A stretch of 33,000 bases of DNA from Oikopleura dioica (lineage: Eukaryota; Animalia; Chordata): contig OU015569.1 of the NCBI GenBank assembly GCA_907165135.1, positions 3,937,001 through 3,970,000 of the forward strand, read 5' to 3'. The notes below the pieces were generated by a model. That model worked only from the letters and a program-made list of their open reading frames with translations. It did not search any database and was not told the origin of the DNA. Of the stretch, positions 10,070-20,592 are shown one piece after another; position 1 is the stretch's first letter; each line of letters begins with the position of its first letter. A program made the translations under genes and the position numbers.

Positions 10070-12578
10070 TTACTGGATGTTGAGAACGCGATTCGGTGGA
10101 ACTTTTGCGAGTTCTAAGTAATTAGAGCAGCTCGAACTGATGCAAAACAAATTTGAACATCTCAAATCGTTGTTGCTAGTTCAAGTCTCTGTGCCAGGAA
10201 TTAATCTTAATACGTATGTACTTCGAACTTTGCCTTGAAGGTCTTTGTTGACTTCCATCGTCACGTACTGGTGCAATAGAACACGGAGTTCTTCGTTCTG
10301 TGTCTGCAAGCTTTCGTTGTCGCTGACGAGTCTGAAAGACAATTAGAAACGTCAAGTAGTGTGTATTCGGGTACTTACGAGGCGCGCTGGTTGAGACACT
10401 CAAAATAACTCTGCTGAGCTTTGTAAAGAGCGTTCCAGAGGATAAGCTTCTTATCGTTGATAATGTGAGACCTAAAAATATAAAGATTGAAGAGTTCAAA
10501 TCAATGATTTCAGTTCTCAGACATTCAAAGCTTGAGCACCGATAATGTGTATTTTTAGAAGTTTTAAGAGCCACGTCGCGACAGATTTTATTGTTCGCGA
10601 AAGAGGTTCATAAACATTTAAAATCGTTAGCAAGTGGGTTCGAATTGTTCCAATGATTTCCTACCTTTCCTCCCAGACTTCCCACTTGATGTCTCCCTTC
10701 GAATGGTTCGAGCTTGTGAGGCTAGTTTTCTTTCTCCTCAGCATCGCATTGTTGATGTAACTGAGAATGCCCTAAATTGAGAATTGATGAACGGCGTAAG
10801 AATGAGATCTAATCATGTCAAGTGCCCTATTCGCGTTAATGGTTATTTTATCTTCGGGTCAATTAAGTGGATAGCAAAAATACCTCGAGAGCATTATTTG
10901 GATCGGCTTTTTCACCGATCGCCCCGTAGTTCGTCATTTCCGCCATCAGCAGTTTGAGTTCAGACTCGTCGTCAATGTTGAGCGCGGCGAAAATCGCATC
11001 GATAAGAATAAGTCGTTTTTCTTCTGGCTTCAGCGGCTCGATAAGCTTGTTAAGCATGGCTTCAACCAGGAACGAGCACTCTGAGCAGAGCAAGTCAAAT
11101 GCCTGGTCAGCTTGCTTCTTGGGGATGCTAGTTTCCCCAGCAAGGATTTTTTAGCATACTCCATAGCAGATGGTCTATGTTGCTTGGAAGTGCTCTTGTT
11201 GTATTCGGGCATGACAAAGTCTACTCCAAGCTGCTGCTCGGAAATGATCTTGTCCGCCTGAAGCGTTCGATTCACCAATTCCATAAGTTCCTGCATGTTC
11301 ATCTCCCAGACCTCTCGGAACTTTTTGTTGTCAGCATCCTCGAAATGCTTCTTTTTCTTTTGGAAGTCGGCGTACTGTTGAAGCAGTCGTCGGTAATCTT
11401 CTCGAAGGTTGCATCCTTCTACGCGGGCTTTTTTCTCTTGCGCCTCGAGCTTTGATCGTAGACTGTTCAGCTGATCCTGCATTTTTGTCAAGCGACGCTT
11501 CTGCTGGCTGTTAGTGATCGTATTTTCGTCATCGCGTTTTTTGAGGACTTGGAAGTTATACTCGAGCTTCTCCTGGTTCAGCTGGTATGAAGCGCGCATA
11601 CTTTCAAGCTGTTGCTCCAGAACTTGCACGTCAGTTTCCAGCTTGATCTTTGTAGTGTGAAGGTCTTCAGCGTCCCGCAGACGGAGCCTGTCGATTTCTG
11701 ACTGTAAAATGTTTTTAAAGCGGAAGAGAGTCCTAAAGAGTTACCTGGAGTTCATCGCGGAGCTCGAACCTGTCTTCGAGATAGTTATTTTCGGTTTTGC
11801 TGAGATGTGCAGCCTTTTCACGCCACAAGTCAGTTGCTTCAACATCTTTGAACTGAGCGTCCAGAGCAGCGATGACTTGTTTTGCTTCGTCTCTGAAAGC
11901 CCGGTCCATCGTCCTGTACTGTTCCACCATTCGCTGTGTGATAATATCGAGATCATCGTACTGCTTCTTCAAGGTCTTGACGTACTCATCTTCGCTGCAT
12001 TTCAGCTCTCGATTCAGCTCAACTAGAAAAATCGTTAACTTTTAGACCAAGAGATTAGAATCACACCTATAAGCTGGTTTTTAGCGCTCAAGACTTCTTC
12101 GCATGCTTTGCATTGGTCAGTAAGCGCGTCCCGAAGTTCCTGAGGAACATCTCTTGCAAGCGATCCTGTCCATCTTCGGCGGATAGCCTCGAATTTCTCC
12201 AGATTAGCGTCAGCTTCATCCGCCAAGATTTTCATGCGACGCTTCTTCTCTTCGTGGACTTCTTTTCTCCTCTCGAACTCTCGCGCAACAGCTGCAATTT
12301 CAACGTTCGAGACGAGTTCAGTGCCTGCCTTTCTCAGAAGCGCGAGGCGGCCCTCCGACACTTTCATCTGGGGGTTCACATCGATTTGTTTCTTTTCCTC
12401 CTCGCTGAAAAGACGCGTATATTTTTTCGGAAAATAAGAAAACTTACATGACCAAGTCGGGCTGCTCCTTTGCTCGGACTCTCTGCTTGATTCTGTCCCG
12501 ACGCTCTTGCATTCTCTTCTCTTTCTCTTCTTGCTCTGTTCCCACCACCCCATCGTCATTGCGAAGTCCGGAAAACAT
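10070..12578 (-). CDS. DRC1: Dynein regulatory complex subunit 1 (CCDC164)
   Basis: TTTTCAG|A-ATG start; KRMQERRDRIKQR, DVPQELRDAL, EYVKTLKKQ, KIKLETDVQVLEQQLESMRASYQLNQEKLEYNFQVLKKRDDEN, LLCSECSFLVE..IDAIFAAL; C-terminus LRVLLHQYVTMEVNKDLQVPP. Confidence 0.95.
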
Positions 12579-12603
12579 TCTGAAAACGCAAATTCCACTC
12601 GCG

Positions 12604-12617
12604 GTCCCTCGAGATAC
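12604..12617. promoter_or_regulatory. Candidate X-box (RFX site) upstream of DRC1
   Basis: GTCCCT-CG-AGATAC, a quasi-palindromic 14-mer 26-39 nt upstream of the DRC1 ATG, resembling the GTNNCY-NN-RGNDAC X-box. Confidence 0.35.
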
Positions 12618-12832
12618 CCTTCGCTAAAATCTATTTCATAGTCAATAAATCACTGTCCAGATTTGTCTCCTATCACTCTCAGATTCTGACTCATTCTCTC
12701 TTTCTCTGCGTACTTAGACAAAGTGTGCTCTCAGCAGAGATCAAACTTTGCTTTGTTGACAAAAGAGGCCCAGTAAAACTTTTCAGACGATGATCACGAG
12801 AAATTAAACGATTTGAAAAAACGGGCTTTATC

Positions 12833-13679
12833 ATGGAAACCTCGACTGTTCCCATCCACCTTGCCATTGTTAATACGACTTCAGTTTTTGAAGAATATGA
12901 AGGCGAATATTGGACACTTATGGGTATTTAGCATTAGCATTAGAAGGCTAAACTAGCTTGAATGGACCTTTCAGGATGCTCTATTTTTCTTACGCTTATG
13001 GGCTTCTTTTGGCTCCTTTCAACAGTAGGAGGAATCGGAACCATCAAAGATCTACTATGCGGGTAAAAAATTATTGTCTTCAAATATCTTAACATTTGTT
13101 CAAGTTTGGCGTGTTCTGCTGCCTGCGAAGGATGGAAAAATGTTGATTACATCACTGAAAGCGTGACGTTCTTTAGCTATTGGACCTGTTTGCCATGGAT
13201 AACCTTTACTTATTGCCTATTGACGGTAAAATGATATGGGATTCAAAATGTATCAAAATTTTGCAGCTTATAAATGGCATTCTGGGAATCTGCGCCGTTA
13301 GATTTGAGCATCTTCCGTCACTCCAAGCTTTCATGATTTTCACAGTGGTCTCCCTTGTTGTTGGTATTCTACTATTTTGGTTCTACGCATGTATCAGTGT
13401 GGCATACTCCTGTTGCCGCTGTTGCTGTGAGAAAATCATTGAAGAAATAAAGGTATTTAAAAAAAAGTTCTTATATCATCATGGTACTTTCAGGAAATGG
13501 ACGAGATGGAAAGCCAACCGGTGAATAACAATCCCACAGAAGGACAGAACAAGAAAACTGAAGAGCCCGTGGAACATAACTATTGTTGTAACTTTTTCCT
13601 ACACTTTGCAGTCCCAATGATTCTATATTTTATCTGTCTATGCATTATCCTTAGCGTTGGCTGGTCCTTTGCCTTTTGA
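12833..13679 (+). CDS. Orphan cysteine-rich membrane protein with about 4 TM helices, 5 exons
   Basis: METSTVPIHL...YWTLMG|CSIFLTLMGFFWLL...LCG|LACSAACEGW...FTYCLLT|LINGILGICAV...SCCRCCCEKIIEEIK|EMDEME...VGWSFAF*. GT-AG introns keep frame; AATAAA follows the stop. Confidence 0.7.
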
Positions 13680-13787
13680 AACCTCTTGAATAAACGCAAG
13701 CACGAATTCTAAGAGAAGTGGTCACAGAGTTATAAAAATAAAGTATATATTAGTAGCATAGAAAAATAATAGAGGCGCAGGATCAAA

Positions 13788-14701
13788 TTAGAGCTGGTAA
13801 GGGATATCGTCCTGCTTGTCGAGTTGGTGAACCAAGGGAGTAGAAAACTTTGCGCTTCTCTTGAATTCTTCGCCAGCTGTTCCACCGACGATCTGTCCTT
13901 TCGTAGCGCTGAAAACAACGAATAATCATTTGATTTTACAAAGCAGACTTACGTTTTGTAAGCTTCATGAAGCTGGCTCCAAACAGTGATGGGCTTTTCG
14001 TTGAGGCAAGAGGAGTCGAACTGAGGTGGTCCCGGCTGAGTAGGGATGCGAGGATTCGCGCGTCGCGCTTCAAGGCGTTGCCTTTCCTCCTAAAACCGTA
14101 GTTTAGTATCAAAGACAAGAGTGTTAAAAAAAGAGATTCATGCACTGATTTTGATGTTTCATCAAAGGGCTAGAGTAAATGTAAATAAATGAGGTAAAAG
14201 CATGCATTAAATGTGTTAAGAGTCTAACCTCTTGTTTACGCATTTCCTCTGCTCTCTAAAAATAAAATTGAAAGGCTCTGCGATACTTGAAGCGAGTGAG
14301 TTCTACCTCCTCGTCAAGAACTTCTTGCAGGGCATCTTGATATCTCTTACGGGTCAAAACGCCGGCCTGAGCCTCTTTGGGGCGGCTATCGGGCTGCTTG
14401 TAGTAATCGGCGGTAGTTGTCAAGAACTGGTGATCAGCCTTTTCTCCAGTAATCTAAAAGATCGCTCATCACAGCTCATAACTACTCAATCTATCTTACC
14501 AGATTTTTGTGGCCATTTTTAAGCTCTACGCTGGTCGAAACCTCACCGTCAGATGATCTATTCAATCTATCCTGAAATAACCAGCTAAGTCTCTCCTGCA
14601 AGAAAAACACGCTAACTTACCTCGACCCAGTTTTCTAAGAGAGTCCGACCGCCCGCATTAGGACTTCTAATCAAGTTGCAGCCAAAGGGAGGGGCGCTCA
14701 T
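13788..14701 (-). CDS. SPAG8: SPAG8-like axonemal microtubule inner protein, 5 exons
   Basis: TTTTAG|A-ATG; MSAPPFGCNL..GRTLLENWVE|DR..KNGHKNL|IT..LTTTADYYKQP.., NEKPITVWSQ, FKRSAKFSTPL. These match the SPAG8 blocks LLxNWxEER, GHxGLLT, EQPxTFW and FRKNxxFSTP. Not in the ORF track. Confidence 0.8.
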
Positions 14702-14861
14702 TCTAAAAATGTAAAAATGTTAATTCAGAAATTCGCGGTTTGTTCGTTTTTGTTTTATAAAAAAAGATATCAATATTAACTATATTTAGCACATCAACGA
14801 AACCCGTTGTTACAGAAATGTAGAACGAAGTCGAGGTGTGGATGAGTTGTCTTGCTTCAAT

Positions 14862-16217
14862 TTATCGTTGTCGGGGCTTGTTGAGCTTGCGAGAGACCTT
14901 GCCCAGATCTTGGTACTGGGTGGTGTACTCGGAGCGGAACACGATTCGACGACGGTCTTTATCAGTTCGCTCGACACAGTGCTCTCGCTGCATTCCCTTC
15001 AGATCTTCTTCGTCGATGTAGTTGGCCTTTAAAATTGATTTAATAAAAGAAAACGGCAATTAAAAATTACCTTGAAGACAGTCTCAACGCTGCTGTGATG
15101 CTGGAGTGGCAAGTGCCAGTGTCCGCTACCAAGGGAGGTGATGAGACGATCAGCCCAAACTGGACGTTGCTTGTCTGTTGGAATATACATATGCGGTGGG
15201 TAGCACTAGAAAGCGTCACATGTATAAATCAAATTCGCTCGCATACCTTGAAAAATCGGCTGTTAGTGGACTCGTCTCCCATTCGATCGGAGAGCCCCTG
15301 TTTGAGACAGTTCTTGCTATCTGTTGGCTTCCCTTATTGCTTCCACGAACGATTCGGCACTGAAAAACTCGAATTCATATTTAAAATAATTTTAAAGACT
15401 TACATCGGTCTCGAAAATGGGGAAGAGTGGTTCCTTCTTTGGCAAATTTTTCATCATCTCGAACAAATCGACTTCAAGCTCTGGCTTCTGTTCGCCGCTC
15501 TGGGGCTCCAAAAGGGGCACGTTGAAGACCTTCTTCTTTGGAAGTTGGCTTCTTGATAGCTGGCGAATTCGAGGCGTCGATGGCTTCTTCAACTCTTCTT
15601 CACTTTCTCGGGGAGGGAGAAGAACCAGCTAAAAAAATCAATGTTTTCTAGAGCAGACTTTGTTTACTTTCCACAATTTGGGTGAAACTTACCGGTTTCT
15701 TGCGCTTATTCTTCATAAGATCAATAATTTGGTCTTCGTGCTGCTTGCATTCAAAACGGCGAAACTGCTCCCGCTGCGCATTACGCTTTTCTGCGTCTGT
15801 GTTCAATCGAGATTGGCTAAAATTCGATGTCAAACACGCAGAATTATTATCTTACCGAATGCAGCAATATGTCTGGCCGATTTTTTGAATTTCAGCATTG
15901 GTGAGGCCAAGGCGTGGACCACGGCTCTTCTCGAATTCAGTAAATGAGCCTTCGTTAGGAGCACCGGCCCGTGTGTAGCGTCGAAAAGACTGAGGAGGAA
16001 GTTTGGGATTTATCTGCCGTTCTCTTTCCTACGAAGACTTTCAAAGCTGAATAATAAAAAAGTGACTTACCAGCCCAAGATGCGCCTTGTTTAGATTTAT
16101 CCTCTTGAACCCACTTCCTCGACTCTGCGACTGTTTGACGCCCTGGTGGGGCCTTGCACCTGAAAATACTCAAATACTTCTCTCTCGATTAAAAACGAAA
16201 AAAATACCATTCTCCAT
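14862..16217 (-). CDS. Uncharacterised multi-exon protein with C-terminal Mn/SAXO-like motifs
   Basis: MEN|GARPHQG..HLGL|ERERQINPKLPPQ..YCCIR|QSRLNTD..KKP|LVLLPP..FETD|..RFFK|CYPPH..SSVETVFK|ANYIDEE..IVFRSEYTTQYQDLGK..QR*. Canonical splice sites, with one frame ambiguity near 15330. Confidence 0.7.
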
Positions 16218-16428
16218 CCCTCGAAGAACTGTGCTGAGCCCCTTCTGACAAATTCGGAAAACATCAATATTACTTCTAGAAACTTTTTTCCATTTTTTTT
16301 TTTATTTCAGCGCTTTTGTGAAAATATAAATTCGTTTATGGTAGCAAAATAGAAGAATTATTCGGAAGTAGAAATCAAAAGGTCAATAGTAATAGTACAG
16401 TAAATTTACAGTAAATAGAAAAACACAC

Positions 16429-17278
16429 TTATTGAGCGGTAGCAACTGTAATTGGAGCGATGTGGTGAGCCTTCCATCTAGAAATCGAGGCTTTATTTTC
16501 ATCCTCTTCTTCTTCGCCGTCTTCAACCACGATGCTCACGTACTCGCCGTGTTGCTCGCAGCCAATGTCGAAAACGTATTTTCCAGGACTGAAGGAAATA
16601 CGAAATTTCAGTTTTTCATCATTTAAACCGTACCCGCTTATTTGGTTGGTCTTCCAGCCGCCCTGGTAGCGGTGATTTTTGTGAATGAGCTCAGCACCTC
16701 CATTTGCCTGGTCACTTTCCCACTTTCCTTTGAAGACTGTGCCGTTCTCTCTGAAAAGAAGATGTAAAGAATTCGGAACTAGTTTAGCTGTATTTACTTG
16801 AACGTGTAAGTACCATCGCCGTGGCGTTTATCATCTTTGAACTGGCCTTCGTAAGTGTCACCGTTGACATATGTGTACGTTCCTGAGAGTATTTTTGACT
16901 TCGTTTGTTTTACGAAAAAAGTTTAGTAACGTACCGATTCCATTTTTCTTGTCGTCTTCCCACTGACCGGAGTAAACTGAGCCGTCTGGGTAATACATTT
17001 TTCCCTCACCGACCTTTTTATTTCTCGAGTAGGATCCGACATATCGTGCTCCACCCTAAAATCTAAGCTCCACGGATAATTCTTAGTCTTTATACTTTGA
17101 ACTTGTAGACACCTTCGCCATGCCTTTGTCCCTTTTCGTACTGTCCTTCGTAGACATCTCCGTTGGACAAAGTCGCCTTCCCGGTGCCGTGCCGTTCCCC
17201 CGCTTCGTTCCGCTCGCCATCGTACTCGCCAAAGTAGAACTCTTGTCCGTCCTCGAATTCTGCCTCGGAATCCGACAT
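16429..17278 (-). CDS. RSPH1: Radial spoke head component 1 (MORN repeats)
   Basis: [42 protein letters not shown], repeated YxGxW/F...HGx[17 protein letters not shown], acidic stretch, RWKA C-terminus. Confidence 0.93.
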
Positions 17279-17351
17279 TTTAGTTCTTAGCTGAATCAAA
17301 ATAAACTGATGGATGAAGGATGAATATCTTAAATGTACAGGCAGAGCGAAG

Positions 17352-17909
17352 CTAAAAATCATCATGAGGGGGCATTGCTTTTATTATTTCCTCTTCAGCC
17401 TTTTTTATCAGCTCTGGATGCTTTGCGGCCATCTTCCGTTTGATAACTTTGAGCCGTTCGTAAGTGGCGTCCATGTCAGTCTTGAGACTGAGAACAACAG
17501 CAGTGTGGTCGTTTAGGCGTTCTGCTAGAATTGCGTAGTGGTTTCCGACGATCAGATTAGCGTTGTGAACCATTTCTCCTGTCTTCTCAAATCTAAAGCG
17601 ATTTACCAGCTTTTTATGATCAAGATAGGAAGAAAATTATGCTTGGCAAAGTGGGGATAAAATGATCACAAAGACGACTCGAGCGATAGGATGACCTTTC
17701 AAAATTATAAATTATAAAAATAGCTGCTACAATGTTGACTTGTTGGATGAAGGCAATTACTTGCCGAACAAATTTCAACTCGCTTACCTCAGAGCAGTAT
17801 CCCGCTGCGCACGTTCTACTTCTTCTATGTCCTGACGACAGAGGATCTGCGTAATATGCTCTGGAGGAGCATTACTGCCACTTTCATCGTGCTCTTGATT
17901 GCGACTCAT
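17352..17909 (-). CDS. KXD1: KxDL-motif protein 1 (BORC/BLOC-1 associated), 2 exons
   Basis: [16 protein letters not shown]|[12 protein letters not shown]...[32 protein letters not shown] matches KXD1 RFEKTNEML...[29 protein letters not shown]. Confidence 0.9.
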
Positions 17910-17941
17910 TGCGCGCCCTGTTTCGGAAAAATCTTTTCCCC

Positions 17942-17955
17942 GTTGCTGGGGCGAC
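17942..17955. promoter_or_regulatory. Candidate X-box (RFX site) at the head of the KXD1-RSPH1-orphan-SPAG8 cluster
   Basis: cGTTGCT-GG-GGCGACg, 33-46 nt upstream of the KXD1 ATG; close to the GTTGCY-NN-GGCRAC RFX motif. Confidence 0.5.
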
Positions 17956-20592
17956 GGAATACACCTCCACTCCTCTGTTCACGAAACTAACAAAATCGCC
18001 AGTTTTTCTTAACACAAAAAAGTCAAAATAGCCTCCGTGTCGTCACAGATTATTGACTCTGTAGTGAGCTGTTGTGATGGTCACATCAGAATTTTGGAGA
18101 AGTGCATACAAAAGAATACATTTTTCTTTCGCAAGTCTTTATTATGGTCGAAGTAAGAGCTCGAGAAGAACAAAAAGCGACAAGAAATAATACTTGGTCC
18201 AGGAAGAAATGACGGTGTTTTTTTCGAATTGCAGTGAAAGAGCTTAATTGTTCTGGGTATAAGGAGATACGTCGTCTTTGCTTTTAGTAGCTGAATATCA
18301 TCCAAACCATAACAGTGAGCACTGACATAGCAAACATGTAAAGCGCCCCTTTGAAAATTGAGCTATTGAGCCGTGAATAAGTATTTTTTCTTAATTACCG
18401 ATCAGCAAAGATAAACGCTGGTGTTCCATTGTGAGAAAATTGTAGTAGCTAATACAGTTATCTCGTTGTCGGGTAAAATCGTTCCCGCTCAAAGCCGGGC
18501 TATCAATCGAGATTCGATGCTCATCAAAATAATTAAGTTATCAGTAAATATTAGCCCTGACTTAAAATATACCCAGTGTGTATATTGCTAGAAGAGGTTA
18601 AGACTGGTTGATATCAAGGAAGACTTATACTTCAAAATTCGAGAGCATAGAAGAAAATTGACAGTTTCTTAACCTACACCTGTAGTAGACATCCTTCTTG
18701 AATGAATGGGATGCGTCTCTTATTAATAGGATGAAATGCTATCAATATCGATTTTTCTACACATATTTCCTACTCTCCTTGAAAGTGAGAACTCGTCTAG
18801 CTGCAGCATGTATTTCTTATATTTTTCAGTCAACTGGCAAAGATGAGACCAGGGAGATGAAATTCAAGATGACCAAGCCGTCAAAATCAATCATCGCTTT
18901 CAATATATTTAATTTATCTTCCATCAAAGTAAAATCAAAGCAAAAAGAAAATATTTTTCCAGTCGTCTCCATCTAATCCTTAGTTCAATAAGAATCTATT
19001 TTCGAGTGAAGATTCAATCTCGTATTTAATTTGGACGCGCACAAAAAGTGGATATATTTCAAATATGTAGCGCCTGGGAAAGAAAGATGATTCCATTGAC
19101 TCTACTATGTCCACATCCGTAGTAGATGGATGAATTCCCTTTGTACCCCCCAAGAATTTTAGAACAGAGCAATTAAGGCCCTCATAAATAGGCGCAAGTT
19201 AAAGTGGTTTAGTTTACGAGCCCACGTGAACTAATAAGAGACAGACAATGAGAAGTTAACGAGCCATTGCGACAACGGATTTTACGCGGCGGCGATACCG
19301 CAGCCGATCTCCTATCCGTATTACTCGCCACCGGCCCATGTTTCGTTTTTCGACTATTGAGTTATTGTAGAGTTGTGTTTACTAACTTTGAGAGAAAAAA
19401 AAGGATGAAAGCTTTTAGTTAACAAAGGGAGTCGCCTCTGCTCGTGGAGCTATGGGAGTGAGATGGTGTGCTTGAGTGTTGACTATCGGCTTCGGGTTTG
19501 GGCCCGCGTTCGTGGAGGCGGGTATCGGGTGAAAAAGAAAGACAACCGAAGGAACACACAGAGAATGAGAGCTACTTCAACCAACTAAACAGTGAAATTA
19601 ACATAACACCGCCTTGTCTGGTGAAAAGAGAGAGAAAGAGAACTCGCCGAGAGAAAATTATCTGCGCCATTTGTGTGAAAGAATAATGGACAATCCAAAT
19701 GCGCCTCCTCTTTTCGCAGGGACCGATCGACCATAATGCGATGTTTGACCCTTTCGGGTTGTTGTACCCAGGGGACTGGGTGAAACTTCGTAGATTTGGT
19801 CACTCGGCTCTAGATCGAGACCTCGACTGACGCGCCTCGTAATTTTACTATAACAGCGTTAGTGAGATGGAAACGCTAACTGAAAATGATTAGATGGCGC
19901 CTGCTTCGTTGAAGAACAGTAAAACCTTGCAAACTCACGTGAAACACAATTGCAAAGCTTTCTGTCCTTTACCGAATCGGGGAGAAGTATTCGACGACAT
20001 CGAAATCAAGGAAGACAAAACAAGGAGGAACTTAGTAGTACACTCTGGGTAACAGTGGCGGATTAATGGCCTTGCGTGAAACTTTGACGCTTGTACCAAG
20101 TCTGTTAACGCCGTTGTAACCGATACGTGGACACGATCGACAGACCATCTTTCCTTCGAGAATAAGGCAATTGCCGTTTAGTTTGCCCGTAGAGCAACAT
20201 AGTAATCGCTTAATTATGGTCATAACTTTAGTTGCGACTATAATTCTGAACGAGGCAATTCATCATTTTCCGCAAAGCGCAAATATTTACTTAGCACGGA
20301 TGAGCTCGAGCTGGACGGTCAATAGCAATCAGTCATTCTTCGGAAGCGACTGGATTGAAGCTTTAGTCAAATACGAAGCCTGGTTAGTTGAAATTCGATT
20401 ACTAAGAATTTCTTCTACTCTCAAAAATGGTAATAATCCAAATGACAATTGCAAGGAAGTCTGAGGTCAATTTTAATTCAAGGAAGGAATTTATTTACCA
20501 ATAGAGCAATATTTAGAAGACACAGTAAGACAGTCATTAAGTACTAAAAGAAGCGGATTCGAGAATAGACAGAATAAAAGAAGGAATAATCG

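What the first reader, a model, noticed from the sequence alone, without database searches (positions are those of the whole stretch)
13788..17955. Putative motile-cilia operon KXD1-RSPH1-orphan-SPAG8 led by an X-box-like motif
Seen: four minus-strand genes with stop-to-start gaps of 73, 211 and 160 nt; AG acceptors shortly before the ATGs (TTGATTCAG, TTTGTCAG, TTTTAG); GTTGCTGGGGCGAC just upstream of the first gene; DRC1 about 1.2 kb further on, on the same strand, with its own X-box-like 14-mer. Known: RSPH1, SPAG8 and DRC1 are axonemal components, RFX/X-box controls ciliary genes, and larvaceans use SL trans-spliced operons. Inference: a functionally coherent axoneme operon, which would also tie KXD1 (BORC) to ciliary expression.
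Basis: partly seen in the sequence, partly recalled or inferred. Interest (0 to 1): 0.8.

Follow-up and report, generated by a model that had tools for sequence, protein, structure and literature searches.

The report
Oikopleura cilia-gene operon with X-box
Three tightly packed genes of the larvacean Oikopleura dioica (RSPH1, an unnamed conserved gene and SPAG8) form an ordinary spliced-leader operon that public data had already predicted. It is probably headed by KXD1, whose promoter carries a conserved RFX-type X-box, but no co-transcription with KXD1 was shown.

Summary
The window is Oikopleura dioica, Okinawa assembly OKI2018_I69, X-specific region.

**Observation.** The four minus-strand genes and their gaps of 73, 211 and 160 nt are exactly as described.

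**Gene identities**
- KXD1 is confirmed by the Pfam KxDL family.
- RSPH1 is confirmed by a collinear match to solved RSPH1 chains.
- SPAG8 is confirmed: the spliced product matches the sea-urchin SPAG8 chain at E 6e-8.

**Operon**
- Reads show the spliced leader joined at the predicted SPAG8 acceptor.
- Published SLOPPR annotation of the Bergen genome already lists RSPH1, gene 3 and SPAG8 as one operon, without KXD1.
- A published table marks all three as trans-spliced.
- KXD1's membership rests only on its small gap to RSPH1 (73-90 nt in four lineages). No polycistronic RNA was seen.

**X-box**
- It is the only strict RFX consensus site in the window, one of about 20 such 14-mers in the genome, and it is conserved against Bergen.
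- Nine other ciliary loci lack one, so RFX function is plausible but unproven.

- Gene 3's real trans-splice site lies inside a conserved TCTAGA spermatogenic promoter element.

Overall this is an ordinary instance of known kinds and of modest interest.

The parts
17942..17955 (-). X-box-like palindrome (GTCGCCCCAGCAAC on the gene strand), 33 nt upstream of the KXD1 ATG
   Evidence: Only strict RFX-consensus hit in the window, 0.14 expected. One of about 20 sites of GTYGCCNNRGCAAC in 64 Mb. Lies in a 17-nt block identical to Bergen against a 75% background.
17352..17909 (-). KXD1 (KxDL motif protein, 120 aa). Exons 17909-17788 and 17592-17352; intron 195 nt.
   Evidence: Pfam KxDL 32.8 bits against a cut-off of 27.2. 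85% identical to O. dioica CBY23035.1, which UniRef names 'KxDL motif-containing protein 1'. Substitutions against Bergen fall at third codon positions. No RNA depth in the four runs laid.
17291..17299 (-). Candidate SL acceptor of RSPH1 (TTGATTCAG), 12 nt before the ATG
   Evidence: An AG at this column is present in all lineages aligned. The Bergen gene model starts just after an AG 5 nt further upstream; the other lineages aligned also have an AG at that column, but this window does not. No SL read was seen here.
16429..17278 (-). RSPH1 (radial spoke head 1, 221 aa, 5 exons). Transcript 3' end at about 16362.
   Evidence: MORN repeats. Exon 1 aligns to residues 7-62 of solved mammalian RSPH1 at E 3e-21, and exon 2 to residues 64-101. 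Introns confirmed by RNA joints, and an X1 contig ends at 16362.
16275..16280 (-). TCTAGA element whose AG|A is the trans-splice site of gene 3 (exon starts at 16275). It is a candidate spermatogenic core promoter.
   Evidence: Lies in an 18-nt block identical in three lineages. The Bergen gene model's 5' end falls exactly after TTTCTAG. The published TCTAGA class is described in PMC6389100. Motif positions.
14862..16217 (-). Gene 3, unnamed, 344 aa, 8 exons. The assembly lacks one G in the run at 15331-15333 (exon 6).
   Evidence: Exons are 95-100% identical in protein to Bergen. Five introns confirmed by RNA joints, and the X1 contig carries an extra base after 15330; Bergen also has the extra base. 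No Pfam, PDB or Atlas match by exon.
14703..14708 (-). SL trans-splice acceptor of SPAG8 (TTTTAG; exon starts at 14702, ATG at 14701)
   Evidence: SL letters are joined here in X10 (5 reads), X12 (8 reads) and an X1 contig. The SL 32-mer occurs 49 times elsewhere in the genome against 0 for the control.
13762..14701 (-). SPAG8 (CFAP143 family, 194 aa, 6 exons; stop ends at 13788, mRNA end at 13762)
   Evidence: The spliced model equals database protein P0009. P0009 matches sea-urchin SPAG8 chain 8snb_7Y at E 5.9e-8 over residues 14-187. All introns confirmed by RNA joints.
12787..13687 (+). Opposite-strand unnamed gene, SL trans-spliced, between SPAG8 and DRC1. Not part of the operon.
   Evidence: SL at 12784 and a contig reaching 13687. 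The Bergen counterpart is a 216-aa gene, marked trans-spliced. No Pfam match.
12035..12581 (-). 5' part of DRC1: acceptor AG at 12581-12580, ATG at 12578. A separate transcription unit.
   Evidence: SL joined at 12582 in an X1 contig. Pfam NYD-SP28 58.4 bits.

Best explanation
This is a spliced-leader (SL) operon of Oikopleura dioica on the X-specific region.

**How it works.** RSPH1, a conserved unnamed 344-aa gene and SPAG8 are transcribed head to tail. They are separated into single mRNAs by 3' end formation and trans-splicing of the 40-nt leader at AG acceptors just before each start codon.

**Probable head of the unit.** KXD1 ends only 59 nt before RSPH1's candidate acceptor and probably heads the same unit. 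Its promoter carries a conserved RFX-type X-box, which would switch the unit on in ciliated and sperm-forming cells.

**Second entry point.** Gene 3 also has a conserved TCTAGA element laid exactly over its trans-splice site. In the published scheme for this species, such elements are male-specific internal promoters. They start transcription about 45 nt downstream and give untrans-spliced mRNA in testis.

**Shown here:** gene structures and names; SL on SPAG8; conservation of gene order, X-box and TCTAGA.

**Taken from publications:** operon prediction and SL status in the Bergen lineage.

**Inferred:** co-transcription, KXD1 membership, RFX binding and use of TCTAGA.
For: **Layout and gene models**
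- Gaps, GT-AG introns and models. RNA joints confirm most introns of genes 2-4.

**Trans-splicing**
- SL is joined at 14704/14703 in two studies and two lineages.
- The SL is encoded 49 times elsewhere in the genome.

**Published support (Bergen lineage)**
- The SLOPPR GFF files for the Bergen reference list operon OP387/OP487 on scaffold_6, 482102-488127. It holds three genes, with SL reads on the second and third and intercistronic distances of 1 and 31 nt.
- These coordinates match the RSPH1, 344-aa and 194-aa genes of locus L001.
- PMC6883708 Table S2 marks all three 'Trans-spliced: yes'.

**Conservation**
- Gene order from the RRM gene to DRC1 is identical in Bergen.
- KXD1-RSPH1 adjacency with a 73-90 nt gap holds in four lineages.

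**Expression**
- One metatranscriptome gives similar contig depths for genes 2-4: 4.5, 5.5-6.6 and 6.2.

**X-box**
- Strict consensus, unique in the window.
- About 20 such sites genome-wide.
- A 17-nt identical block against Bergen.
- An RFX DNA-binding domain is encoded in the genome.
- Two other strict sites sit just upstream of a CFAP65/HYDIN-like gene and an LC8 dynein light chain gene.

**TCTAGA**
-.
Against: - No read or contig bridges any of the three gaps.
- KXD1 had zero depth in all four runs while genes 2-4 were covered.
- KXD1 is absent from the SLOPPR operon, and RSPH1 had no SL reads there.
- RSPH1's 'trans-spliced' label could come from gene 3's site at the edge of its gene model, given the rule used.
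- In Bergen the KXD1-RSPH1 gap is 352 nt, with a TATA-like run 15-22 nt before the RSPH1 model start.
- Gap 2 holds conserved blocks: TCTAGA, and ACCATAA in this lineage. These could be a promoter of gene 3's own.
- The strict X-box pattern is not in excess over its reversed control genome-wide.
- Six of the 20 strict sites are inside long ORFs.
- None of nine other ciliary loci (IFT20 x2, RSPH3, RIB43A x2, tektin x4) has one within 1.5 kb.
- With 75% background identity, a 17-nt identical run is uncommon but not rare: three runs of exactly 17 nt, and eight longer, in 1.9 kb of aligned upstream DNA.
Confidence: 0.6

Rival explanations
1. The operon has three genes and starts at RSPH1. KXD1 is an independent single gene that merely lies upstream. 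The X-box then serves KXD1 alone, or acts from about 650 nt away on a start site of RSPH1 inside or just after KXD1.
For: - SLOPPR calls RSPH1 'upstream in operon' with no SL reads and leaves KXD1 out.
- KXD1 had no depth where genes 2-4 had 4.5-6.6.
- The Bergen gap is 352 nt, with a TATA-like run before the RSPH1 model start.
- KXD1 protein is less conserved (85%) than genes 3 and 4 (94-100%).
Against: - In four lineages the gap is only 73-90 nt and must also hold KXD1's 3' end, which leaves little room for a promoter.
- The RSPH1 model's 5' end follows an AG, and an AG is kept at this place in all lineages. That fits an acceptor rather than a start site.
- RSPH1 is labelled trans-spliced.
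- SLOPPR saw SL on only 9% of genes, so its zero is weak evidence.
Confidence: 0.3
2. There is no co-transcription. The genes are a conserved tight cluster, each with its own small promoter, and the SL is added to single-gene transcripts, as happens for about 40% of SL mRNAs in this species.
For: - 58% of SL transcripts come from operons, so the rest do not.
- Gaps 2 and 3 contain strongly conserved blocks, including TCTAGA and an ACCATAA-like element.
- No bridging RNA was seen.
- Published operon calls rest on distance plus SL only.
Against: - Distances from 3' end to acceptor are about 60-85 nt here, and 1 and 31 nt in the Bergen models. That is within the range where 98% of SLOPPR calls match reference operons.
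- SPAG8's acceptor is 1 nt before its ATG, and no promoter element was recognised in gap 3.
- Depths of the three genes are similar.
Confidence: 0.15
3. The 14-mer before KXD1 is not an RFX site. It is a chance match, or the site of another factor, kept by ordinary promoter constraint.
For: - There is no genome-wide excess over the reversed pattern.
- 0 of 9 sampled ciliary loci have a strict X-box within 1.5 kb.
- Runs of 17 nt or more occur 11 times in 1.9 kb of aligned upstream DNA.
- No paper on RFX targets in Oikopleura was found.
Against: - It matches both half-sites perfectly with the canonical 2-nt spacer.
- It is unique in 33 kb against 0.14 expected.
- It is the longest identical block in the 220 nt before the ATG.
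- Other strict non-coding sites lie 100-400 nt before a CFAP65-like gene and an LC8 gene.
- An RFX gene is present.
Confidence: 0.4

Closest known systems
Oikopleura dioica SL operons (Ganot 2004; Denoeud 2010; Danks 2015; SLOPPR, PMC7986045; Plessy 2024, PMC11067885)
   Same: - Same-strand genes with short gaps, a single 40-nt SL added at AG acceptors, and downstream genes trans-spliced.
- The RSPH1, gene 3 and SPAG8 trio is itself listed as operon OP387/OP487 for the Bergen genome.
- By the 500-bp rule of PMC11067885, all four genes would be called one operon.
   Different: - Published O. dioica operons are described as functionally loose, leaning to housekeeping, translation and germline genes, and as rarely conserved between lineages.
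- Here two of the three members are axonemal, and the order is kept between Okinawa and Bergen.
- Stop-to-ATG gaps of 160-211 nt exceed the classic 60-nt cut-off. UTR-aware distances are about 60-85 nt.
TCTAGA spermatogenic core promoter and internal operon promoters of O. dioica (Danks 2018, PMC6389100)
   Same: A TCTAGA in a T-rich context whose AGA coincides with a trans-splice site, in front of an internal operon gene. That paper reports 89 such cases.
   Different: No CAGE data were available here, so the male start site about 45 nt downstream (around 16236-16230) is predicted, not seen.
RFX/DAF-19 X-box promoters of ciliary genes in nematodes, flies and vertebrates (from general knowledge)
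   Same: An imperfect palindrome GTNRCC-NN-RGYAAC within about 100 nt of the start codon of a gene unit that encodes axonemal proteins. The genome has an RFX DNA-binding domain.
   Different: - The gene directly behind it is KXD1, a BORC/BLOC-1-related protein not known as a ciliary gene. The ciliary genes would depend on it only through co-transcription.
- No enrichment at other ciliary genes of this genome was found.
C. elegans hybrid operons with internal promoters
   Same: A polycistronic unit in which a downstream gene also has its own tissue-specific promoter (cited).
   Different: O. dioica has a single SL and no SL2. Operon membership therefore cannot be read from the leader type.

Membership tests
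O. dioica SL-resolved operon | Consecutive genes on one strand with short intercistronic distance (60 nt or less strict; 413-500 nt or less relaxed) | tested here: met
   Stop-to-ATG gaps are 73, 211 and 160 nt. Stop or 3' end to acceptor is 59 nt or less, about 84 nt and about 60 nt. The relaxed rules are met; the strict rule is borderline.
O. dioica SL-resolved operon | Downstream genes receive the spliced leader at an AG acceptor | tested here: met
   SPAG8: SL reads and a contig at 14704/14703. Gene 3 and RSPH1: only through published Bergen data.
O. dioica SL-resolved operon | A polycistronic precursor spanning the gaps | tested here: inconclusive
   No read or contig bridges a gap. The libraries were poly(A)-selected, the raw reads came from a 90-95% identical lineage, and depth was low.
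O. dioica SL-resolved operon | One upstream promoter, with no obligatory promoter in front of internal genes | not testable with these tools
   This needs CAGE or a promoter deletion. The conserved TCTAGA over gene 3's acceptor suggests an extra male-specific internal promoter.
RFX X-box | Match to GTNRCC(N0-3)RGYAAC close upstream of the gene start | tested here: met
   GTCGCCCCAGCAAC, 33-46 nt before the KXD1 ATG. It is the only hit in the window, against 0.14 expected.
RFX X-box | Conserved between lineages, and an RFX factor is present | tested here: met
   A 17-nt identical block against Bergen. PF02257 match of 72.9 bits in the genome. Only two lineages could be compared.
RFX X-box | Motif associated with ciliary genes in this genome | tested here: inconclusive
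   Of 14 strict sites outside long ORFs, three precede cilia-related genes: this cluster, a CFAP65-like gene and an LC8 gene. But 0 of 9 sampled ciliary loci carry one, and there is no excess over the reversed control.
RFX X-box | RFX binding and RFX-dependent expression | not testable with these tools
   This needs ChIP or DAP-seq, or a reporter with a mutated motif.
SPAG8 / CFAP143 | Sequence homology to a SPAG8 of known structure over most of its length | tested here: met
   P0009 (equal to the spliced model) against 8snb_7Y 'Sperm-associated antigen 8': E 5.9e-8, residues 14-187 against 11-193. The next hits have E above 0.1.
SPAG8 / CFAP143 | Pfam PF22584 (CFAP143) above its cut-off | tested here: not met
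   P0009 has no PF22584 hit at E 0.1 or below. Relatives P0011 and P0015 reach only 15 bits against a cut-off of 27. This short form covers only part of the 437-position model.
RSPH1 | N-terminal MORN repeat array collinear with RSPH1 rather than other MORN proteins | tested here: met
   Exon 1: best three hits are mammalian RSPH1, E 3e-21, query 6-61 against 7-62, including the non-repeat lead-in. Exon 2 continues at 64-101, though there MORN1 scores higher.
KXD1 (KxDL family) | Pfam PF10241 above its cut-off | tested here: met
   32.8 bits against a cut-off of 27.2 on exon 2 alone. UniRef names the Bergen orthologue KxDL motif-containing protein 1.
TCTAGA spermatogenic core promoter | TCTAGA in a T-rich context, 40-50 nt upstream of a sharp male-specific start site | tested here: inconclusive
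   The motif and its context are present and conserved in three lineages, with the AGA on the trans-splice site. The start site itself could not be tested. The motif count in the window (9) equals expectation (10).

The most novel reading that the evidence does not exclude
A four-gene unit driven by RFX through the X-box places the BORC/BLOC-1-related KXD1 under the motile-cilia programme, together with RSPH1, SPAG8 and a so far unnamed, strongly conserved 344-aa protein that is itself a new axonemal component. In testis, a TCTAGA promoter laid over gene 3's trans-splice site uncouples gene 3 and SPAG8 from KXD1 and RSPH1. One locus would then switch between operon and sub-operon modes by sex or tissue.
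Probability: 0.2. Interest if true: 0.6.

Novelty: new member of a known kind. Interest (0 to 1): 0.33.

Why it matters
If the unit really runs from the X-box through SPAG8, it would be a clear case of a functionally coherent, transcription-factor-addressable operon in a chordate. O. dioica operons are otherwise described as functionally loose and evolutionarily unstable.

It would also:
- give a handle on how RFX-type control works in a genome where many ciliary genes have no promoter of their own;
- nominate an unnamed conserved protein as a candidate axonemal component, and link KXD1 to ciliary expression.

As it stands, the core of the finding was already predicted in public supplementary data and follows known rules. 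The practical gains are:
- better annotation (SPAG8 named, the gene 3 acceptor corrected, an assembly frameshift flagged);
- a specific, testable locus.

Tried and rejected
**Exon-by-exon searches of genes 3 and 4**
- Pfam gave nothing.
- The solved-structure sequences gave nothing for SPAG8 exons 3, 5 and 6, or for the fused Bergen exons. Only the full-length database protein found SPAG8.
- Gene 3 exons 3 and 8 found nothing in PDB, and exon 3 found nothing in the Atlas.
- A word search with the Bergen stop-free ORF around exon 5 returned only genomic ORF fragments.

**Looking for transcripts**
- The contigs fetched through KXD1 relatives were all genomic.
- P0009 has no contig on record.

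**Published tables**
- Exact NCBI coordinates were not in the SLOPPR files. Four-digit prefixes found the operon.
- The gene ids were absent from the one stored supplement of PMC6389100.
- KXD1's id was not in the stored, truncated part of PMC6883708 Table S2.

**Other negatives**
- Rfam found no family in the window or in the ultra-conserved upstream blocks. Folding of those blocks gave z-scores no better than -1.9.
- No telomerase-like template was found there.
- DRC1 as part of the operon is rejected: an opposite-strand SL gene lies between.
- The DRC1 X-box is rejected.
- The RRM gene as upstream operon member is rejected on distance: 2.7 kb of non-coding DNA.
- The search of earlier findings was never open.

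- The joined spliced models were built only inside scripts, to check frames and to compare with stored proteins.

Full report
**What the window is**

The loose ends of RNA reads at three acceptors read, on the gene strand, as the leader ending in TTGTCTAACAG. This 32-mer occurs 49 times elsewhere in the window's genome, against 0 for the control.

KXD1 exon 2 finds Oikopleura dioica CBY23035.1. The spliced gene 4 product is identical to CAG5095887.1, named OKI2018_I69.XSR.g14385. The genome has 64.28 Mb in 19 contigs. The window is therefore O. dioica, Okinawa assembly, X-specific region.

Raw reads filed under the same species label are only 90-95% alike, with differences at third codon positions. 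They come from another cryptic lineage.

**Checking the observation**

The four minus-strand genes, their start and stop positions and the gaps of 73, 211 and 160 nt are exact. My exon models use only GT-AG introns of 39-195 nt. Twelve of the sixteen introns of genes 2-4 appear as joints in reads or contigs.

GTTGCTGGGGCGAC is at 17942-17955. Read on the gene strand (GTCGCCCCAGCAAC), it fits GTNRCC(N0-3)RGYAAC perfectly. It is the only such site in 33 kb, against 0.14 expected.

**Gene identities**

| Gene | Identity | Evidence |
|---|---|---|
| 1 | KXD1 | Passes the Pfam KxDL cut-off on exon 2 alone |
| 2 | RSPH1 | Exon 1 aligns to residues 7-62 of three solved mammalian RSPH1 chains at E about 3e-21, including the non-repeat lead-in; exon 2 continues at 64-101 |
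| 3 | Unnamed | No Pfam, PDB or Atlas match by exon |
| 4 | SPAG8 | See below |

For gene 4, single exons found nothing. The exhaustive representative search with the fused Bergen exon returned the full-length protein P0009, which equals my spliced model. P0009 matches the sea-urchin sperm doublet chain 'Sperm-associated antigen 8' at E 5.9e-8 from end to end. No other hit is below E 0.1. Its relatives touch Pfam CFAP143 only below the cut-off.

Gene 3's exons are 95-100% identical in protein to Bergen at about 77% DNA identity. It is a real, strongly constrained gene of 344 aa. A published Blast2GO table also leaves genes 3 and 4 unnamed, so the SPAG8 name is an annotation gain.

The joined models were used only inside scripts. 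All searches were made by exon reference or with stored proteins.

**Is it an operon?**

- The leader is joined at the AG 14704/14703, one base before the SPAG8 ATG. This is seen in 5 and 8 raw reads of two runs and in a full-length contig of an unrelated metatranscriptome.
- The same contig set shows SL on DRC1 (12582) and on an opposite-strand gene (12784). DRC1 is therefore a separate unit.
- Depth at the 5' ends of RSPH1 and gene 3 was only 1-2 reads, KXD1 had none, and no record bridges a gap.

Published evidence for the Bergen reference, where gene order from the RRM gene to DRC1 is identical:
- The SLOPPR GFF files list a three-gene operon on scaffold_6, 482102-488127. It has SL reads on the second and third genes and none on the first, with intercistronic distances of 1 and 31 nt.
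- The coordinates are those of the RSPH1, 344-aa and 194-aa genes.
- The 5' ends of all three gene models follow an AG.
- A ribosome-profiling table marks the three genes, and the opposite-strand neighbour, as trans-spliced. RNA levels in day-6 females are 16.6, 9.8 and 7.3 RPM.
[quoted passage not shown] RSPH1's label could therefore stem from gene 3's site at its 3' edge.

By the 500-nt rule used for the Okinawa, Osaka and Barcelona assemblies, all four genes would be one operon. None of these sources shows a polycistronic RNA. They rest on distance plus SL.

**KXD1**

For membership:
- The stop-to-ATG gap to RSPH1 is 73-90 nt in four lineages, with 59 nt from stop to the candidate acceptor in the window. 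This must also hold KXD1's 3' end, so little room is left for a promoter.
- An AG is kept at that place in every lineage.

Against membership:
- KXD1 is not in the SLOPPR operon, and RSPH1 had no SL reads there.
- KXD1 had no depth where genes 2-4 had 4.5-6.6.
- In Bergen the gap is 352 nt, with a TATA-like run shortly before the RSPH1 model start.

I put KXD1 membership near even odds.

**The X-box**

For function:
- Strict consensus with the canonical 2-nt spacer.
- Only about 20 sites of GTYGCCNNRGCAAC in 64 Mb.
- The longest identical block (17 nt) in the 220 nt before the ATG when compared with Bergen.
- An RFX DNA-binding domain is encoded in the genome.
- Among the 14 strict sites outside long ORFs, one lies about 100 nt before a CFAP65/HYDIN-like gene. 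A perfect palindrome lies about 80 nt before a TATA box of an LC8 dynein light chain gene.

Against function:
- No excess over the reversed pattern.
- Six strict sites are inside coding sequence.
- Runs of 17 nt or more occur eleven times in 1.9 kb of aligned upstream DNA.
- None of nine other ciliary loci has a strict site within 1.5 kb. The few one-mismatch matches lie within or downstream of the matched gene regions rather than upstream. Some of those genes may themselves be internal operon genes.
- No paper on RFX targets in Oikopleura was found.

The DRC1 '14-mer' fits only a pattern that occurs 40 times in the window, and it lies in a segment missing from Bergen.

**A second promoter inside the unit**

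Gap 2 is unusually well conserved in three lineages. The conserved AG belongs to GTTTCTAGAAGT, and the Bergen gene 3 model starts exactly after TTTCTAG.

Danks et al. 2018 describe TCTAGA in a T-rich context as the core element of over 70% of male-specific start sites. It lies 40-50 nt upstream of the start and is used as an internal promoter in operons. In 89 cases its AGA is the trans-splice site, so the testis mRNA lacks the leader.

The element at 16280-16275 fits that class. A start about 45 nt downstream (around 16236-16230) would give a 13-19 nt leader before the ATG at 16217. It would also skip an out-of-frame upstream ATG at 16264 that the SL-spliced form carries.

This suggests a hybrid unit. 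In some cells it runs as an operon with SL. In testis, gene 3, and by read-through SPAG8, start from an internal promoter. This is inference from motif, position and conservation; no CAGE data could be laid.

**Verdict**

- It is open for KXD1, plausible but unproven for the X-box, and wrong for the DRC1 motif and the gene 3 acceptor.
- The locus is a member of known kinds: an O. dioica SL operon, an RFX-type promoter and a TCTAGA internal promoter. Its functional coherence and its conservation are somewhat unusual for this species.
- Interest is modest.

Noticed in passing
window 19200-19990 (both strands), between the RRM gene and KXD1: A cluster of ultra-conserved non-coding blocks. Runs of 67, 50, 50, 47, 42, 35 and 35 nt are identical to the Bergen lineage against a 75% background, with no codon periodicity. 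There is no Rfam match and no strong fold signal; one 20-bp imperfect hairpin lies at 19895-19995. No gene is annotated there in Bergen. They could be enhancers or an unannotated RNA.
   Followed up: partly
window 15331-15333 (gene 3, exon 6): The assembly has a run of three G (gene strand). A same-lineage transcript contig has four, and Bergen also has an extra base. As written, the window's gene 3 is frameshifted (1034 nt of CDS). This is most likely a homopolymer error of the assembly.
   Followed up: yes
window 12582-12784: A 200-nt divergent region lies between the SL acceptors of DRC1 (minus) and an unnamed opposite-strand gene (plus). It probably holds a bidirectional promoter. It contains a 21-nt block nearly identical to Bergen (one mismatch), CTTTTGTCAACAAAGCAAA, which is not a strict X-box.
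   Followed up: partly
window 15647-15652 (intron 4 of gene 3): A second TCTAGA lies about 20 nt before the exon 5 acceptor and is conserved in Bergen (L001 14256). It could mark another internal start site, or be chance.
   Followed up: no
window 16262-16264: An upstream ATG, out of frame with the gene 3 start, lies between the conserved trans-splice site (16276) and the ATG (16217), and is present in three lineages. It would be in the SL-spliced mRNA but not in a TCTAGA-driven one.
   Followed up: partly
L001 10641-10994 against window 17279-17351: The KXD1-RSPH1 gap is 352 nt in Bergen but 73-90 nt in the window and in three metagenome-derived lineages. The extra DNA is AT-rich.
   Followed up: partly
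L009 1962-4246: In one metagenome contig, gene 3 exons 1-2 follow RSPH1 as usual, but exons 3-8 are not found in the next 2.3 kb. A mitochondrial-carrier-like ORF appears instead. This is a lineage-specific rearrangement, a large intron or a chimeric contig.
   Followed up: partly
G000, many places on C1 (for example 1043176-1043200, 3379461-3379485): A dispersed repeat carries overlapping 15-mers (GTAACCCTAAGTAAC and GTTACCTTCGGTAAC) that fit the loose X-box pattern. These inflate genome-wide counts of that pattern.
   Followed up: no
L020 (G000:C1:14335263) and L032 (G000:C5:5372574): Two other strict X-boxes. A perfect palindrome GTTGCCATGGCAAC lies about 80 nt before a TATA box and a non-coding first exon of an LC8-type dynein light chain gene. 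GTCGCCCTGGCAAC lies about 100 nt before the ATG of a CFAP65/HYDIN-like gene.
   Followed up: partly
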